From: Octopus sinensis
Taxonomy: Eukaryota
Assembly: GCF_006345805.1 (NCBI RefSeq)
Contig: NC_043026.1
Span: 6,820,001 to 6,884,000 of the forward strand
DNA length: 64,000 nucleotides
Direction of reading: 5' to 3'
Shown: one piece after another, positions 6,871 to 54,540 of the stretch
How positions within the stretch are numbered: position 1 is the first letter of the stretch
Layout: the number at the start of each line of letters is the position of its first letter
Notes under the pieces: generated by a model
Seen by the model: only the letters and a program-made list of their open reading frames with translations
What the model was told of the DNA's origin: nothing
Databases searched by the model: none
Translations under genes and position numbers: made by a program

Positions 6871-7833
6871 CTAGAGAGAAGAAAAACAGAAAGGTAATAA
6901 TTATAAAAAAAAAAAAATAATAATAAACATTGTGTACAGTGCTCAGGTGCACTACAACTCATCTAAAGTGTATATATAATCAGGTGTAGTTTCGGCGGAT
7001 TTCGGAAAGCATGAGGGACTTAAAGGATGCAGTGTCATGGCAGTCAACAACTGATGCAGGCAGTTTATTCCATGCTTCAGCAACTCTGAGCGTGAAAAAA
7101 TGTCTCCGAAAGTCATGGGAGCTGTATTGTTTTCTGACTTTGTAGGCATGTCCACGTGTGTTAGACACATGGAGATCAAAAAGGTGTTCAGTGTTGTTGT
7201 TGGTGAGGTGGTTGATAACTTTGTGGGTGTTTACCAAGTCTGTCGCCAGATGCCGGAGCTTCAGTGAATCCATGCCCAGGGATGTAGCCCAGTTACGTAG
7301 CTTTAACTCTCAAAAGTTAACTTGGTATTCGGTTACGAATAAATGAAAAGAATCCAAAGACTTCTTTCTTACCTGAGCAGCAGCTTCAGTCAGGCCATTA
7401 ATGGATGAGGAGAAGTTTCTGACGGCCTCGCAGAACCCATCCGTGTCAGCTTTCTTGGCATCATTTGATATTCCTGTCATGGCATCGCCAAGAGACTGCA
7501 GATTGGATGCGAGAGAGAGAAACAGAGATGAGACGAGGAATAAGGGAATGTAGTAAAGAACACACACACACACACACACATACATGAGGGGTTGGTGAAA
7601 GGTTCCTGGTCTTGGGTAAAAGAAAAAAGCAGGAGGATCAGTTAATTATGATTCTATTCAACATATTCCCTTCTCAGATCCACACACTTATTGCAGGGGA
7701 GGTCCTTCAGTTTTTCTAAGCCCTGTAAAAGAACCCAAGAACTTGGGCCTCCAACCAGGCCATTTGTGATACCCTTAAAACCAGGAACCTTTCAGCACCT
7801 TCATGTGTGTGTACGAGTATGAGTGTGTGTGTG

Positions 7834-11967: not shown

Positions 11968-14900
11968 CACGAAAGGATGAGTGGAAAAGATATGAAGAGG
12001 ACAAATAGTAAAGAATACACAATCACTTGACATGCAACTAATAAAATATATATATACATATATATATATATTATATATATATATATATAATATATATATA
12101 TATATGTATGTATATTAAAAAAAATAATAAACAAACCAGTACAGATAATTTAGATAAAAGAAACAAAATTGATAATGTTGAAAATGAGAAAAAAAAAAAA
12201 AAACCCATTCCTATACACACAAGTGCGTTTACATACGTAAATATATATACATACATATGTAGATATATGTATGTAGAATTAGTGATCACCTTACAGGGAC
12301 TTACCTGGAGTTCCTTAGTGGAGACAGTCTGTACAGGGAAACAGAAGAGAAATAATGAGAGCGCGAACACAGCAGGTAAAGCTTAGAGGTCAAAGGCTGG
12401 AGGTCAGGGTCAAAGGTTAGAGTTTAGGGTCAAAGGTTAAAGTTCAAGTAGGCATGAAGCAGGATTGAAATTTAGCGCGGCGGACGATTAGCTTTTAACT
12501 GTTAGGAAAGTGTGGCTGTCGGGATGGTGGTCACGGTGGTTATTTAGCCCTGGGTCGTATTTGATACAGTAGACCTATGATGATCAAAAGTGTTCCAGCT
12601 GTGGCCATCCCGTCTTTATTCAGATATAGTATATCTAGGACTACTTTATCTAATGTGTCCTTTGCTGCTGTTGTTAAACCCCGGGTCAGTACTGATACAA
12701 CTGACCTATATAATCAAGGGTGTTCCAGCCATGATCATTGCGTTTTTTTATTCAGGCACAGTATATCTAGGACTACATTATATGATGTATCTTCATTTTT
12801 GTTTAACCCCAGGTTAGGATGAAAAAATGGCGTTCCAACTGGAAAATATGTTAACAATGGGCAAAACAGTCCAAATTCTTAAACTTAAAATGAAAACCTT
12901 TAAAGGTAATGGAAACAATAGGAATCTTCTTACATTCCGGACATGGCTCTCACTATCAACCAGCTGAAGTAAAGTTGGTACAAAACAGGCCCCTCACTGC
13001 TGTCAACCACAAAAGCCAAGTGTTTTTAGTGAAGACAGAGAGATTAGTGAGACAGATTAGCAAGTGGGATTAGGAAGAGAGTGATTAAGGACACAGATAT
13101 TAGCAGGAAAGAGAGGAGGAGAGATTAGCAAGAGAGAAAGCGGGAGAATTTGAGAGACAGAGCAAGAAAGAAAGAGATTAGTGTGAGAGAGAGATTAGCA
13201 AGAGAGCGAGAGGAAGAGAGATTAGTGAGTGAAAAGGAAAGGGATTAGTGAAAGAGAGATTAGCAAGAGAGATTAAAGACAAAGCATAGATTGTAAGAAA
13301 TAGCCAAAGCAGATAAAGCCGACCAGCTGGAGCAAATAGCCGATCAGAGGAGAGTAAGCTGATGATAAGTGGATGAGTGGACGATGATATACACAAGACA
13401 ATATGTACATACAGAGACAGGACAAACAGACAGACACAATATATATATATACCATAAATCCTCGAGTACAGTCCACTCATGAGTATAATACACAGGGGAT
13501 TTTTAGGGGGCTGTACTTCTGAAAAACCTAAACCTGGTGTATAATACGCACCCCTTCTCTAACTTGAGTCGTGTGTAATTAAGCCAGCAGCACCTAGTCA
13601 AGAAACACTTCAGTGCATGCGTAATACAAAATAATGGTGATGTTCTTAACTGTTATATGGGAATGTAAATATGTTTGCTAATTGTTTCTGTTACATGTTA
13701 TTCTGTGTTCTGAATACTTTTATTTTAATAAATGTTGCTTACTGCAAGTTATGGATGATTCTTTTATGAATTCATTGCTTTCAGGCTTAGCTGAAGGTAT
13801 TTTCGCACCCAACATCACAAAATGCGTCTGAATAAACATTGCTGGACAGCAAATAGAGACTCAGACATTGCTGAGAAAATATTTTTCATTTTTAACCTCG
13901 TGTATAATACGCACTAGGGATTTTGACCTTTAAATTTTGGGGAAAAAATGTGGATTATACTCAAGGATTCATGGTATATATATACATAGATGACATTTTT
14001 ATATATATAACATAAATATGTATATAAATAAAGTATATAAACCCTTGATATCTGCATGACTGACTCCAGACACTCGTAGTACGAGTGGTCGCTGACTGGT
14101 TCGTTGGGAACTTCGAGCAGGCTACGCATCATCTGGATTTGCCGCAAAGCATTATCGCATTCCTTTTGTCCTGGTGCTGATACGGTACAAATGTTTATGA
14201 GTTGGTTAATGCTGTCAGTTACTGCCCTGGCAGCTTGTGCAAGTAGGTTCTTCGCGTTTGGCGCGTTGGGGTCTGCTGACACAGACTTAGCCACGACAAG
14301 TAACTTGCTGGACACTGTGGACACACTTTTCAGTCCTCCGATTATCTGCATTTGGGTGTCACTGTCCTTCGTGACGCCAGCCATAACTAGACCGCTGTCC
14401 ACAAAGTCCTTGTAGGCGTGTCCATAACGGTTGGACGAGGAGGCAAGCTGCTGTGGAGTGCCGCGCGACGTGGTCACTATGTCGCTGGCTGCTTGGTTCA
14501 AATTCACGGCCGCTTGGTTCATTTCGCCCTGGGCCTCCTGGTATGATCTGTTGGTCTCTGGGATCTGAAGAAGAACGGACAAAACGTAGATGGTTAGAGG
14601 GATGGGAAACAGTAACACAATTAGGAATTTTGAAAGAAGTTTCTCTAAAACTGGTTTTTAAACATCAAATGGGTATTAGGCTCCACCAGATTGAAATAGT
14701 AATCAAAGGGTTCCATGGATAAGAAAGGGTTGAGGACCCCTGTTTTAGATGTATTGGTATGTATTGCAAGAAACAGCTGGGTTTCTTTCTCCAACATTTT
14801 ACATAATTCAACTTGCACGAGTAGATGTGGGAAAAAAAAAAATAGGGATTTCGAAAGAAGTTTCTATAAAACTAGTTTTTAAACATGATATGGCTTTGGG

Positions 14901-44201: not shown

Positions 44202-47200
44202 ATATACTCTTTACTCTTTTACTTGTTTCAGTCATTTGACTGCGGCCATGCTGGAGCACCGCCTTTAATCGAGCAACTCAACCCCGGGACTTATTCTTTG
44301 TAAGCCCAGTACTTATTCTATCGGTCTCTTTTGCCGAACTGCTAAGTGACGGGGACGTAAACACACCAGCATCGGTTGTCAAGCAATGCTAGAGGGACAC
44401 ACACAAACACACACACGGATATATATATATATTTGCACACAGATATGTACATACATATACACATATATATATACACATATATATACACAATTACATATAT
44501 ACACATTCATATACAAATGTGTACACACACATATGCATACTTATAGACACACACACATATATGCATACATATACTCACACATAATGCATTCTTATATATA
44601 CACACACACACACATAGAGCTGTGTTAATGCACAAGAAATACGATGATGAGAGTACTCAATACATGCACCTGCCAGGTGGGTGTGGGTACAGGGTGGGTC
44701 CTTTCAATGGGAAATTGTCGAGGAATTCGGTTCGAAGTCTTGGGTGAAGACTTAAGATTTCTGAGACGTTCTTTGTGCTGTCAGATGATGACTTTCGCAC
44801 TGGGGAACCTCTTGAAAGACGGCTTTGTGCGAGGGTCGGTGGGGGGGGGGCATCGAGGAACACAGCCTCCGTTTATTATGGTTGAGCAAATAGGATCTTT
44901 TGTACCATTTAAGCATGTGTGTGTGTGTGCATGGTCTGTCTGTGTGTGCATGGTCTGTCTGTGTGTCCAGGACAGAGAAAGTGTGTATTTGAGAGAGAGT
45001 GAGAGAAATGTATATATGTATATTTATGTGTGTGTATATGTATAGTTGTGTGGTAAGAAGCTTGCTTCCCAACCACATGGTTCTGGGATCAATCCCACTC
45101 TGTGGTAACTTGGGCAAGTGTTTTGCATTATAGCCTTGGGCCAACCAAAGTCTTGTGGCTGAATTTGGCAGACGGAAACTAAAAGAAGCCTATATATATA
45201 TATATATATCATCATCATTTAACGTCCGTTCTCCATGCTAGCATGGGTATATATATATATATATATGCATATATTTGTGTGTCTGTGTTTGCCCCCTACA
45301 CCATCGCTTGACAACCGATGCTGGTGTGTTTACGTCCCCATAACTTAGCTGCTTGGCAAAAGGAGACTGATAGAATAAGTACTAGGCTTACAAAGACTAA
45401 GTCCTGGGTCGATTTCCTCGACTAAAGGCAGTGCTTCATCATGGCCACAGTCAAATGACAAACAAGTAAAAGAATAAAAGAATATATATATATATATATA
45501 TACGTTAGAGAGAGAAAGAGAAAGGGAGAGAGGTGGTTCAAGGCAGATTTGGCTGCTATTTCTACCAAGTCCGATTACCATCTAGCTGTCTCCTTAGTGA
45601 GCTCTGGTGGTGCTGAGATAGTGATGATGATGATGATGATGATGATGATGGGGTTGGTAGCAGCACAAATGGAGCTAGTAGTAGTAGCAGCATTACAGAT
45701 GTCTCTGTTCTCACTAGTATGCAGCAAGAAGAGGAAGGGGAGGAGGAGGAATAGAGGGGTGTGAGGATGTTGGTGGTGGTGGTGGTGGTGGAGGAGTACT
45801 AAATAGTAAACTAATTGTTCTTTGGAGCCGTTCAGGAAGTTGAGTGGTGCCACACCAAGGAGCCCCGGGGTAGGGAACTTTTTCTATAGGCGCTTGTCTG
45901 TCTGTCTGTCGCTAGTTCCTTCTTTAAAACAGCTGCTGCTGTTGTTGTTGTTGTTTAACCACAGGTCAGTCCTGGTCCATCAAACCATCTGTGTTTCGGC
46001 CAGGAACATCCCACATTTTATTCAGGCATAATCTACCTAGGACTACATCATCTAATGTGTCCTTCTTTCCTTGTTTAATCTCAGGTCGGTCTTGATCCAG
46101 GAAACCTATGATCAAAAGCATTCCAGCCATGACCATCCCATCTTGTGCTTAGATATAATACATGTAGGAATACATTATCTAATGTGCCCACTTTATACAC
46201 ATACACACACATATATATAGATATACACATATATACACACACACAGATATATACACATACATACACACTTACATATATATATACACATACATACACACTC
46301 ACATATAGATATACACACACACACACGCACTTGTCCCAGGACTTATTTGTTGTAAGTTTAGTATTTATTCTATTGGTCTCTTTTGCCGAACTGCTAAGTT
46401 ATGGGGGACGTAAACATACCAACATCAGTTGTCAACTGAAGGTAGTGGGGACAAACACCCACACACATAAATGTGTGTATGTGTATGAATATATATATAT
46501 ATATATATATAGACATGCAACGGGCTTCTTTTCAGTTTCTGCCTACCAAATCCACTCACAAGGCTTTGGTTAGCCTGAGGCCATAGTAAAAGACACTTTA
46601 CTCAAGGTGTCAAAGTACAGTGGGACTGAACCTGGAACCGTGTGGTCAGAAAACAAGCTTCTTACCACACAGCCATTCACGTGCCTAACTTTTCAAGACA
46701 GACATTTCTTAATTTCGAAATTGGAAATTCACCTCTCACACACACACACACACATATACACATATACATACACGTGTGTGATGGTCTTCTTAAAGTCCCC
46801 GGCTACCAAATGTGTTCGCAAAAAGATTTGGTGAAGCCAGGGCTATTGTAGAAGACACCCATGGAAGAACAAAAGGTGAATGTTAAAATGACGATGACCT
46901 GACCGTGATGATGGCAAAAGATGCTGGGTGAACGGAATTTAATGAAAGACAGAAGAATGCAGAGAAATTAAGCCAAACAATTAGGTCGTTCTTGATGGTA
47001 ACGATAGCTCCAATAAATAACGAGTCTGTAATGAAATGGTGTGCATATATGTATATAATATGTCTGAATATATATACATATATATGTATATAATATGTGT
47101 GAATGAGTGTGAGCACACACACACATATATATATATATATACATAATTATATATAGAAATATACAGACATACATTTTAACAAAGACTGTATATGTCTGTC

Positions 47201-52930: not shown

Positions 52931-54174
52931 CTGCAGAACAAAGAAAAGAGAAGAGACACCATAAGAAAAAGCAAAATGACGGAGTGCGGGGACAAAAAGG
53001 GAAAGAAGATAAAGATGGTTAAACACTGAAGCAAAATATATGCAGGGCTTAATGAGCGGGGCTTGTGGGACATGCTGGAAATAAATGCCAAATGCCCAGC
53101 CCATTAAAGTATGTTCTGCCATAACCATTTGGAATCGACCTATTTGAATATGCCTCTGGTTCTGGGATACAAAGTGACTGAAACTAAAATCTTTCACCAA
53201 ATAAAGATTAAGAAGCTTTGAGAAACACGGTATGTAAAAGGGCACCATTCGAGCGTGATCGTTACCAGCATCACCTTACTGGCACCTGTGCCAGTGGCAT
53301 GTGTAAAAAGATTTGAGTGAGGTCATTGCCAGTACTGCCTAACTGGAAGGACATCCAGCTGTAGAAACTCTGCCAGATCAAGATTGGAGCCTGGTGCAGT
53401 CCTCAGTCAAAATCGTCCAACCCATGCTAGCATGGAAAGCAGACATTAAACGATGATGATAATGATGAAAGAATTTGTTTCTTTTTAACGATGAAACTCA
53501 AAGGAGATGAAGCTACAAAAAACAGCAGGTAAATATTGGGTTACAAAACCTCTTGGATAAAAGGAAGACTGGCTTTTTGTTGAAATTCCAAAAGAATTTT
53601 TAATCTAAGATCTTCACCCTATTATTTAGAACTTTATTCAAGTGCTATTTAAAAAAAAGAAAATTAAAACCATCCATCAAGATTTTATTTTAATTTATGC
53701 TACAAACACCAGATTAATAAGGATAGAGTTATTCTACTAAATTCTTCATCATTTTGGAAATTAATTAAAACAAAGGCAGGTGATTTCAACACAAATAGGG
53801 TAACAAAAGGGTTAAAAGGATCTAATTAAAAACCTTCTCTCAAAATTTCATCTTAATTTATCTTAAAGGTTCATTAACAAAAAGGTTAAATATCTACTTT
53901 ACCAGGACTAAACTGGGGTTAACCCTTTTGATACCAATCCACCAGAGACCACCACTCCTGGTTCTATGATATAAATTTCCTATTTTAATGTGATCTAAAT
54001 AAAAAACTTCTATCAAAAATTCCATGTTAATCTATGATCCAAACAACGGATTAATAATGACAAATTTATTTGACTGAATTCTTCGTTATTTCTAAAACTA
54101 ATTGAACCAAAGGCTCTGCATTTTAGCAGAAATAGGGTAACAGAGAAACAAAGCACAAAAAAATCATAAATTAG

Positions 54175-54540
54175 ATAATGTAGCCCTAGAGACACTGTGT
54201 CTGGATAGAAGATGGGATGGTCATGGTTGGAACATCCTTGATCCTAGACCTGTTGGATCAGGGCTGACCTAAGGCTAAACAACAAGGAGGGGGCACATTA
54301 AATGATGTAGCCCCAGATAGACCATGTCTGAATAAAAGATGGGATGGTCATGGTTGGAACAACTTTGATCCTAGGTCTGTTGGATCAGGGCTGACCTAAG
54401 GCTAAGCAACAAGGAGGGACACATTAAATGACGTAGCCCCAGATAGACTATGTCTGAATAAAAGGTGGGATGGTCATGGTGAGGGCAGCCGTGATCATTT
54501 GTCTGCTGCTGCATCAGGACTGACCTTGGGCTAAATAGCA
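54175..54540. repeat. 126-bp tandem repeat (about 3 copies); inverted relatives at 12577-12830 and 46015-46170
   Basis: gatgtagccc anchors at about 54178, 54304, 54430. Confidence 0.8.

What the first reader, a model, noticed from the sequence alone, without database searches (positions are those of the whole stretch)
12305..12328. 24-nt microexon (TVSTKELQ) inserts into the KANK-binding helix of talin R7
Seen: a canonical acceptor and gtaagt donor around 8 in-frame codons between ...[13 protein letters not shown] and SLGDAM..., and the upstream constitutive donor is weak (gtttat). Established: in mammalian talin-1 the segment SY1389FGCLDSVMENSK1401VLG1404EAM is R7 helix 29, part of the KANK KN-motif binding groove, and G1404L abolishes KANK binding. 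The octopus insertion point aligns to K1401/V1402, two residues before the G1404 equivalent. Inference: inclusion (about two helical turns) would displace the groove and act as a splice switch for talin-KANK coupling, and so for microtubule capture at adhesions. I know of no description of such an isoform in molluscs.
Basis: partly seen in the sequence, partly recalled or inferred. Interest (0 to 1): 0.82.

Follow-up and report, generated by a model that had tools for sequence, protein, structure and literature searches.

The report
Candidate 24-nt talin R7 microexon
A 24-base, in-frame mini-exon with near-perfect splice signals sits in a talin gene intron, where it would add eight amino acids to the helix that binds KANK; the sequence is real and unlikely to be chance, but nothing available here could show that the cell uses it.

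Summary
On the minus strand, 12328-12305 reads ACTGTCTCCACTAAGGAACTCCAG (TVSTKELQ). It has a polypyrimidine tract, CAG acceptor and CAG|gtaagt donor, inside a phase-0 intron between talin exons ending ...SVMQISR (14043, donor AGG|gtttat) and starting SLGDAM... (7495). An ungapped alignment to mouse talin-1 puts the insertion between K1401 and V1402. The helix-29 KANK-groove residues Y1389, S1400, K1401 (R here), G1404 and S1411 are conserved.

It is the only such candidate on either strand of the window. Markov nulls expect 0.01-0.05 per 64 kb. Its donor is the best in the gene, and the upstream donor is the weakest of about 24. The exon lies in unique sequence.

Usage could not be tested: no cephalopod genome, transcript or protein was reachable. 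There is no counterpart in the homologous oyster intron. Of 123 talins spanning the junction, 114 have no indel nearby and none has an 8-residue insert. Scallop RefSeq isoform X5 does carry a 2-residue insert exactly there.

Best reading (about 0.5): a lineage-restricted alternative cassette microexon that breaks or re-registers R7 helix 29, disturbing the KANK groove and probably R7 stability. A chance pseudo-exon remains a serious rival (about 0.35).

The parts
14043..14564 (-). Upstream constitutive talin exon (522 nt, 174 codons: IPETNRSY...[13 protein letters not shown]). It encodes the end of R6, R7 helix 28 and the N-terminal half of helix 29, up to the K1401 equivalent.
   Evidence: Translation. 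Ungapped phmmer alignment to talin-1 1229-1401. tblastn with scallop and amphioxus talins, and splice-site context.
14037..14042 (-). Weak 5' splice site of the upstream exon (AGG|gtttat).
   Evidence: It has no purine at +3 and no G at +5, and is the weakest of about 24 talin donors in the window.
12383..12444 (-). Three copies of a 20-nt tandem repeat (ACTCTAACCTTTGACCCTAA on the gene strand), 55-116 nt upstream of the candidate acceptor. It carries CTAAC/CTGAC/TTGAC branch-point-like motifs.
   Evidence: Tandem Repeats Finder. Motif scan. Any role is unknown.
12329..12379 (-). 3' splice-site region of the candidate exon: a 51-nt AG-free zone, a branch-point-like CTCAT with its A at -28, a pyrimidine tract (14 of 17 Y at -20..-4) and a CAG acceptor.
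12305..12328 (-). Candidate cassette microexon, 24 nt, ACT GTC TCC ACT AAG GAA CTC CAG = TVSTKELQ. It is phase 0-0 with no stop, and 50% GC against 36% for the intron.
   Evidence: Unique sequence within the window.
12299..12304 (-). 5' splice site of the candidate exon, CAG|gtaagt (9 of 9 consensus positions).
   Evidence: This is the only CAGGTAAGT on either strand of the window. The other four sense-strand AGGTRAGT sites are all real talin donors (42054, 38723, 20008, 48278).
7373..7495 (-). Downstream constitutive talin exon (123 nt: [15 protein letters not shown]...TEAAAQ). It encodes the C-terminal half of helix 29 from the V1402 equivalent, including G1404 and S1411, and helix 30.

Best explanation
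The 24-nt segment is most likely a genuine, lineage-restricted, alternatively spliced cassette microexon of the talin gene.

Shown: it has a complete and strong set of splicing signals and preserves the reading frame. It lies in an ancient phase-0 intron that splits R7 helix 29 between the K1401 and V1402 equivalents. The helix-29 residues that build the KANK KN-motif groove are all conserved in the flanking exons.

Inferred: when included, the eight polar residues TVSTKELQ cannot be absorbed silently in the middle of a bundle helix whose length is invariant across animals. There are two options.
- The helix continues. The C-terminal half is then shifted by about 12 Angstrom and rotated by about 80 degrees. 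S would take the place of G1404, E the place of M1407 and L the place of S1411.
- The insert loops out next to K1401. STKE also looks like a helix N-capping box.

Either way the S1400/G1404/S1411 pockets that face helix 36 are no longer contiguous. KN-motif binding should be weakened or lost, and the R7 bundle is probably destabilised. That would also lower its unfolding force and loosen its protection of R8. The insert also creates an RxxS/SxxE motif (R-T-V-S, S-T-K-E), a possible phosphorylation site.

Whether, where and how much the exon is included is not known.
For: - Exact sequence, frame and splice sites.
- Talin identity and residue mapping, with conservation of Y1389, S1400, K1401 (R), G1404 and S1411.
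- Role of those residues and of G1404L in KANK binding (PMC4995097; PMC10281804).
- Only candidate of its quality on both strands of the window.
- Expected 0.01-0.05 per 64 kb under Markov nulls.
- The donor is the best in the gene, and four of the five sense-strand AGGTRAGT sites are proven talin donors, with none on the antisense strand.
- Branch-point-like motif at -28 and a 51-nt AG-exclusion zone.
- Unique, non-repeat sequence and a local GC rise. No Rfam RNA in the intron.
- The intron position is conserved in oyster, two other invertebrate loci and vertebrate talin-2 fragments.
- A RefSeq scallop isoform has an insert at exactly this junction.
- Precedent for an in-frame cassette exon inserted in a talin rod helix that changes mechanics and ligand binding (TLN1 exon 17b, PMC9997659).
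Against: - There is no transcript evidence of any kind.
- There is no cross-species conservation evidence. The homologous 6.7-kb oyster intron has no comparable candidate. The only candidate in a third invertebrate locus is unrelated in sequence and not significant.
- None of 123 talins spanning the junction has an 8-residue insert, and 114 have no indel within 10 residues. This argues that the helix length is under strong constraint and that an insert here would be damaging.
- About one AGGTRAGT site per strand per 64 kb is expected by chance, so the donor alone is not remarkable.
- The thresholds of the chance test were partly chosen after seeing the candidate.
- No UGC motif lies close to the acceptor (the nearest is at -46) and no GCAUG lies downstream, so there is no hallmark of the known neural microexon regulators.
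- The structural consequences are reasoned from homology, not modelled.
Confidence: 0.5

Rival explanations
1. It is a chance pseudo-exon. A consensus donor happens to lie 24 nt downstream of a pyrimidine-rich AG in a 6.5-kb AT-rich intron. It is in frame by luck and is never included, or only at noise level.
For: About one AGGTRAGT per strand per 64 kb is expected by chance, and the whole configuration is expected 0.01-0.05 times per window. That is small but not negligible for a reader scanning many windows. No conservation was found in oyster or in the other invertebrate locus. No talin among 123 has an 8-residue insert here. A mid-helix insert in a conserved bundle looks deleterious. No regulator motifs lie nearby. 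Very short exons are intrinsically hard to define without dedicated enhancers (general knowledge).
Against: It is the single best donor in the gene, combined with a full acceptor (branch point, tract, 51-nt AG-free zone). It is frame-preserving and stop-free in the one frame that matters. The sequence is unique. There are no decoys of similar quality on the antisense strand. A scallop isoform shows that this junction can carry an insert.
Confidence: 0.35
2. It is a real cassette exon, but its main effect is not KANK-specific. It acts like TLN1 exon 17b, weakening the R7 bundle. This would lower the unfolding force, expose the R7 vinculin-binding helix and release R8. Alternatively it adds a phospho-regulated site (RTVS/STKE). 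Loss of KANK binding would be only a by-product.
For: Exon 17b inserts 17 residues in the first helix of R2 and lowers the force needed to open R1-R2, with enhanced vinculin binding (PMC9997659). Bouchet et al. note that R7 mechanostability protects R8. The invariant helix length across 114 of 123 talins implies a packing constraint. The insert sequence has RxxS and SxxE motifs (motif knowledge from memory).
Against: The insertion lies within three residues of G1404 and next to K1401, residues directly implicated in KN binding. A direct effect on KANK is therefore hard to avoid. No stability or phosphorylation data exist.
Confidence: 0.25
3. It is a constitutive exon in this lineage. Every talin molecule of this animal carries TVSTKELQ, and the skipping form is the rare one.
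For: Both of the microexon's own splice sites are much stronger than the upstream donor it would compete with.
Against: All KANK-groove residues around the junction are conserved as in talins that lack the insert. No other talin carries such an insert.
Confidence: 0.05

Closest known systems
TLN1 exon 17b (human talin-1 51-nt cassette exon; Gallego-Paez et al. 2023, PMC9997659)
   Same: An unannotated, in-frame cassette exon in a talin gene. It inserts residues into a helix of a rod bundle and changes the mechanics and ligand binding of that switch domain.
   Different: Exon 17b is 51 nt (17 residues), lies at the start of the first R2 helix next to the R1-R2 linker, is vertebrate, and has been shown experimentally. 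The present candidate is 24 nt, lies in the middle of R7 helix 29 inside a mapped ligand groove, is in an invertebrate, and is unverified.
Engineered talin-1 G1404L mutant (Bouchet et al. 2016, PMC4995097)
   Same: It perturbs the same few residues of helix 29 and uncouples talin from KANK1 and cortical microtubule stabilising complexes without abolishing adhesion. It is the functional analogue of what inclusion might do.
   Different: It is a point mutation that keeps the helix intact. The microexon would add two helical turns or a loop, with probable effects on the whole bundle.
Pecten maximus talin-1-like isoform X5 (XP_033725564.1)
   Same: A mollusc talin model with extra residues (NK) exactly between the K1401 and V1402 equivalents, that is, at the same exon junction.
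   Different: It has only 2 residues, with no sequence similarity to TVSTKELQ. Its genomic origin (6-nt exon or shifted splice site) and its RNA support could not be examined.
Animal frame-preserving microexons (3-27 nt) that tune protein-interaction surfaces, including the SRRM4/eMIC neural programme (from memory: Irimia et al. 2014; Torres-Mendez et al. 2019)
   Same: Length, multiple of three, strong splice sites, polar or charged peptide, and location in a cytoskeletal adaptor at a binding surface.
   Different: The nearest UGC is at -46, not adjacent to the acceptor. Tissue specificity and conservation are unknown. It lies in mid-helix rather than in a surface loop.

Membership tests
Talin rod domain R7, helix 29 (KANK-binding face) | Sequence homology to talin R6-R7 with colinear alignment. 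| tested here: met
   phmmer against PDB 6r9t: E = 9e-77, ungapped over residues 1229-1442. Pfam talin domains are present on homologues.
Talin rod domain R7, helix 29 (KANK-binding face) | Helix-29 groove residues Y1389, S1400, K1401, G1404 and S1411 are present. | tested here: met
   They read Y, S, R, G and S at the aligned positions. Their roles are taken from PMC4995097.
Talin rod domain R7, helix 29 (KANK-binding face) | Helix-36 partner residues (W1630, S1637, S1641, R1652) and a KANK orthologue with a KN motif in the same organism. | not testable with these tools
   The window ends at the residue 1490 equivalent. No genome of the source organism was reachable.
Alternative cassette microexon | Length of 27 nt or less, multiple of 3, open in the frame set by the flanking exons. 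| tested here: met
   24 nt, phase 0-0, no stop.
Alternative cassette microexon | Functional-looking 3' and 5' splice sites. | tested here: met
   CAG acceptor, 14 of 17 pyrimidines, CTCAT at -28, 51-nt AG-free zone, CAG|gtaagt donor. Rarity was tested.
Alternative cassette microexon | Inclusion and skipping junctions are both seen in RNA. | not testable with these tools
   No transcript or protein of the source organism is in the searchable collections.
Alternative cassette microexon | Conservation of the exon and flanking intron in related species. | tested here: inconclusive
   Absent from the homologous oyster intron. Only an unrelated weak candidate exists in L003. No cephalopod relative was available, so the relevant comparison was not possible.
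SRRM4/eMIC-dependent neural microexon | UGC motif close upstream of the 3' splice site (criterion from memory). | tested here: not met
   The only UGC within 52 nt is at -46 to -44. There is no GCAUG in the 100 nt downstream.
Recursive splice site / RS-exon | The acceptor AG is immediately followed by GTRAGT, so that a 5' splice site is regenerated. | tested here: not met
   The acceptor is followed by ACTGTC. The upstream exon end AGG plus ACT does not make a GT donor.
Exonised transposable element | The exon and its splice sites lie inside an interspersed repeat. | tested here: not met
   Self-BLAST shows that 12276-12538 has no other copy in the window. The repeats lie at 12539-12817 and in the TA/CATA microsatellite at 12230-12275. 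The test is limited to this 64-kb window.

The most novel reading that the evidence does not exclude
Cephalopods (or octopods) have evolved a tissue-regulated microexon that splits the KANK-binding helix of talin R7. It would give the animal a splice-controlled way to uncouple integrin adhesions from KANK and cortical microtubule capture without touching integrin, actin or vinculin functions. This would be a natural counterpart of the engineered G1404L mutant. The same exon junction may be a recurrent site of isoform variation in molluscs, as the scallop NK insert hints.
Probability: 0.2. Interest if true: 0.7.

Novelty: new member of a known kind. Interest (0 to 1): 0.42.

Why it matters
Talin is the central force-bearing adaptor of integrin adhesions. 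Each rod bundle is a mechanical switch with its own ligands. How cells choose between talin's ligands is mostly explained by force and phosphorylation. Splicing has only recently entered the picture, with TLN1 exon 17b.

A natural isoform that specifically removes or retunes the KANK site would show that the adhesion-microtubule link can be set at the RNA level. It would also provide a physiological analogue of the G1404L tool mutant. If the exon is not used, the finding is only a well-formed decoy.

Tried and rejected
1. Looking for the inclusion isoform or any protein of the source organism. The search for homologous proteins was run with the insert-containing R6-R7 segment and with the FERM exons. 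The best hits were about 70-74% identical, with no cephalopod. The tool returned nothing longer than 433 aa, although longer talins sharing more words are in the collection.
2. Exact look-up of the 234-aa read-through ORF of the upstream exon: not on record.
3. Degenerate DNA pattern of the microexon plus donor in metagenome contigs: 0 hits.
For the same reason the two isoforms could not be modelled with structure prediction, and I did not try another route.
5. Look-up of the scallop isoform's locus, to see how NK arises: not on record.
6. Homologous introns. Oyster L001 has no candidate. L003 has only a weak unrelated 24-nt candidate. The L005-L012 contigs stop before the relevant exon.
7. 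Rfam scan of the intron: nothing, so a structured RNA gene was rejected.
8. Recursive splice site, exonised repeat and a gene on the opposite strand were all rejected.
9. Literature: no paper combines talin with microexons, and none on octopus microexons mentions talin.

Full report
WHAT IS IN THE SEQUENCE

The gene runs on the minus strand. At 12328-12305 the sequence is ACT GTC TCC ACT AAG GAA CTC CAG, which translates to TVSTKELQ. It is preceded by ...gcgctctcattatttctcttctgtttccctgtacag and followed by gtaagtccctg.

The upstream exon is 14564-14043 (522 nt). It ends ...[20 protein letters not shown] and is followed by gtttat. The downstream exon is 7495-7373. It starts [15 protein letters not shown] after ...caatctgcag. 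Both junctions fall between codons, so including the 24 nt keeps the frame and introduces no stop.

GENE IDENTITY AND RESIDUE MAPPING

The two flanking exons joined without the insert align to mouse and human talin-1 (PDB 6r9t and 8vdo). E-values are about 1e-76, and there is a single ungapped stretch, query 2-215 against residues 1229-1442. That fixes R as K1401, S as V1402 and G as G1404.

The helix-29 residues that Bouchet et al. identify as shaping the KANK groove are Y1389, S1400, G1404 and S1411, plus K1401 of the proposed LD-recognition box. Here they read Y, S, G, S and R. The literature statements were checked:
- The KN motif binds between helices 29 and 36 (alpha2 and alpha5 of R7, or alpha2 and alpha9 of R7R8).
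- G1404L and W1630A abolish binding.
- G1404L talin supports adhesion but disperses KANK1 and disorganises microtubules (PMC4995097).
- In the crystal structure, the KN L43 side chain sits next to G1404 (PMC10281804).

tblastn with scallop and amphioxus talins shows that the window holds about 27 talin exons, from the FERM F1 loop to the start of R8. R8 and R7 helices 35-36 lie outside the window.

IS IT MORE THAN CHANCE?

- Within the 6547-nt intron (36% GC), this is the only short (3-60 nt) AG...GTAAGT pair with a pyrimidine-rich upstream tract, whatever the frame.
- Over both strands of the whole window there are four such pairs. This is the only one that preserves the frame and is open, and the only one with AG before GTAAGT.
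- CAGGTAAGT occurs once in 128 kb.
- AGGTRAGT occurs five times on the sense strand and never on the antisense strand. The other four (42054, 38723, 20008, 48278) are all genuine talin donors.
- Sequences simulated from order-1, -3 and -5 Markov models of the gene strand give 0.0075-0.01 candidates per 64 kb with thresholds matched to the candidate. With looser thresholds (AGGTRAGT, tract at least 0.7, 3-51 nt) they give 0.054. About one AGGTRAGT per strand is expected by chance.
- The acceptor has the full anatomy: CAG, 14 of 17 pyrimidines at -20..-4, a yUnAy motif (CTCAT) with its A at -28, and a 51-nt AG-free zone.
- Compared with the gene's real exons, the candidate's donor is the best and its acceptor is typical. 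The upstream donor AGG|gtttat is clearly the weakest.

The configuration is thus unlikely by chance (roughly p = 0.01-0.05 per window). The thresholds were partly set after the fact, and the first stage scans many windows.

SURROUNDINGS

- The exon and about 230 nt around it (12276-12538) have no other copy in the window.
- An interspersed dimeric repeat lies at 12539-12817, with copies near 54166-54476 and 45942-46189.
- A TA/CATA microsatellite starts 30 nt downstream.
- A 3 x 20-nt tandem repeat at 12383-12444 carries CTAAC, CTGAC and TTGAC motifs.
- GC content rises to 46-50% at the exon, against 2-32% just downstream.
- No Rfam family matches the intron.
- The acceptor is not followed by GT, so this is not a recursive splice site.
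- The nearest UGC is at -46 and there is no GCAUG downstream, so the usual neural or RBFOX signatures are missing.

COMPARATIVE EVIDENCE

The phase-0 intron after the K1401 codon is old. Read-through ORFs or mapped exons show it in oyster (P0001; L001), in two unidentified invertebrate assemblies (L002, L003) and in vertebrate talin-2 fragments. Some lineages have lost or moved it (P0050; P0007, P0010 and P0016, which break after LLGE or VLGK).

The 6.7-kb oyster intron contains no in-frame open candidate with a GTRAG donor and a pyrimidine tract. The 1.3-kb L003 intron contains one 24-nt candidate (FPIHIHLK, AAG|gtaaga). It is unrelated in sequence and is expected by chance at about 0.2.

An exhaustive HMMER search of 1.84 billion cluster representatives with a talin R6-R8 fragment, pooled with the earlier hits, gave 123 sequences spanning the junction. 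Of these, 114 have no net indel within 10 residues, and none has an 8-residue insert. The one clean exception is P0077, Pecten maximus talin-1-like isoform X5 (XP_033725564.1). It reads ...SVMEKSK-NK-ALGEAM..., a 2-residue insert exactly at the junction.

Two conclusions follow. The length of helix 29 is under strong constraint, so an insert here is a drastic change. At least one mollusc annotation nevertheless carries an isoform with extra residues at this very junction.

WHAT COULD NOT BE DONE

- No cephalopod genome, transcript or protein could be reached.
- The protein word-index search never returned anything longer than 433 aa.
- The scallop locus was not on record.
The best matches here are bivalve talins at about 70% identity.

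MECHANISM (INFERENCE)

Helix 29 runs at least from Y1389 to S1411, so the insert is mid-helix. Two outcomes are possible.

- Continuous helix. Eight residues add about 12 Angstrom and rotate everything downstream by 80 degrees (800 mod 360). In the positions of V1402-G1409 the bundle would see T-V-S-T-K-E-L-Q: S for G1404 and E for M1407. In the positions of I1410 and S1411 it would see S and L, placing a leucine where a small pocket residue is needed. This is the same logic by which G1404L blocks binding.
- Loop-out. TVST has poor helix propensity and S-T-K-E resembles an N-capping box. The insert would then form a bulge next to K1401, directly on the KN-binding face.

In both cases the S1400/G1404/S1411 pockets facing helix 36 are disrupted. 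Loss of core contacts should also weaken the five-helix bundle. R7 mechanostability protects R8, and TLN1 exon 17b lowers the opening force of R1-R2 and enhances vinculin binding. A general mechanosensitivity effect is therefore as plausible as a specific KANK switch. The peptide also creates RxxS and SxxE motifs.

COMPARISON AND NOVELTY

In kind this is a frame-preserving cassette microexon at a protein-interaction surface. It would be a second example of a cassette exon inside a talin rod helix, after exon 17b. It is not a member of the neural SRRM4-type class by the one motif criterion testable here. It is not a recursive site and not an exonised repeat. No paper in the searched library links talin to microexons or reports such an isoform. 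If real, it is a new member of a known kind, at a functionally interesting position.

VERDICT

- Probability that the exon is genuinely spliced at a meaningful level: about 0.5.
- Probability that it acts as a physiological talin-KANK switch: about 0.2.
- Chance pseudo-exon: about 0.35.
- Interest is 0.42 as it stands, rising to about 0.7 if RNA-seq and cephalopod conservation confirm it.

Noticed in passing
window 14043-14564 (minus strand); L003 9114-10125; L005 1446-2984: The 522-nt exon covering the end of R6 and the first half of R7 is a single exon here. In other invertebrate talin loci it is split by introns after ...AQAAR and after ...RQIQ/E. This suggests two intron losses in this lineage.
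   Followed up: partly
window 12383-12444: A 3 x 20-nt tandem repeat (ACTCTAACCTTTGACCCTAA on the gene strand) lies 55-116 nt upstream of the candidate acceptor. It is rich in CTAAC, CTGAC and TTGAC branch-point-like or STAR-protein-like motifs. Its role is unknown.
   Followed up: no
window 12539-12817, 45942-46189, 54166-54476: A dimeric interspersed repeat family (about 72-78% identity between copies) occurs in talin introns. One copy ends about 210 nt upstream of the microexon.
   Followed up: partly
window 12305-12313 (minus strand): An internal AG (ctaag|GAACTCCAG) could serve as an alternative acceptor. It would give a 9-nt ELQ version of the exon with the same donor.
   Followed up: no
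window 12934-12963 (minus strand): A second, weaker in-frame open candidate of 30 nt ([10 protein letters not shown]; acceptor cttcag, donor AAT|gtaaga) lies in the same intron, 600 nt upstream of the microexon.
   Followed up: no
P0077 (Pecten maximus talin-1-like isoform X5, XP_033725564.1), residues about 850-860: This RefSeq scallop isoform has NK inserted exactly between the K1401 and V1402 equivalents (SVMEKSK-NK-ALGEAM). It is the only clean insert at this junction among 123 talins.
   Followed up: partly
L003 11774-11797 (ENA ERZ21849168 contig_20827): The homologous intron of an unidentified invertebrate talin also holds a 24-nt in-frame open candidate (FPIHIHLK, ttgattag|...AAG|gtaaga). 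It is unrelated in sequence and not statistically significant.
   Followed up: partly
window 14037-14042 and the other donors listed: The donor AGG|gtttat is an outlier among about 24 talin donors in the window, most of which are gtaag, gtgag or gtaac types. It has neither a +3 purine nor a +5 G. How this large exon is defined is unclear.
   Followed up: partly
tool behaviour: In two searches search for homologous proteins returned no protein longer than 433 aa. Talins of 465-2590 aa sharing more 5-mers with the query are present in the collection. Full-length eukaryotic proteins therefore seem to be invisible to that tool.
   Followed up: partly
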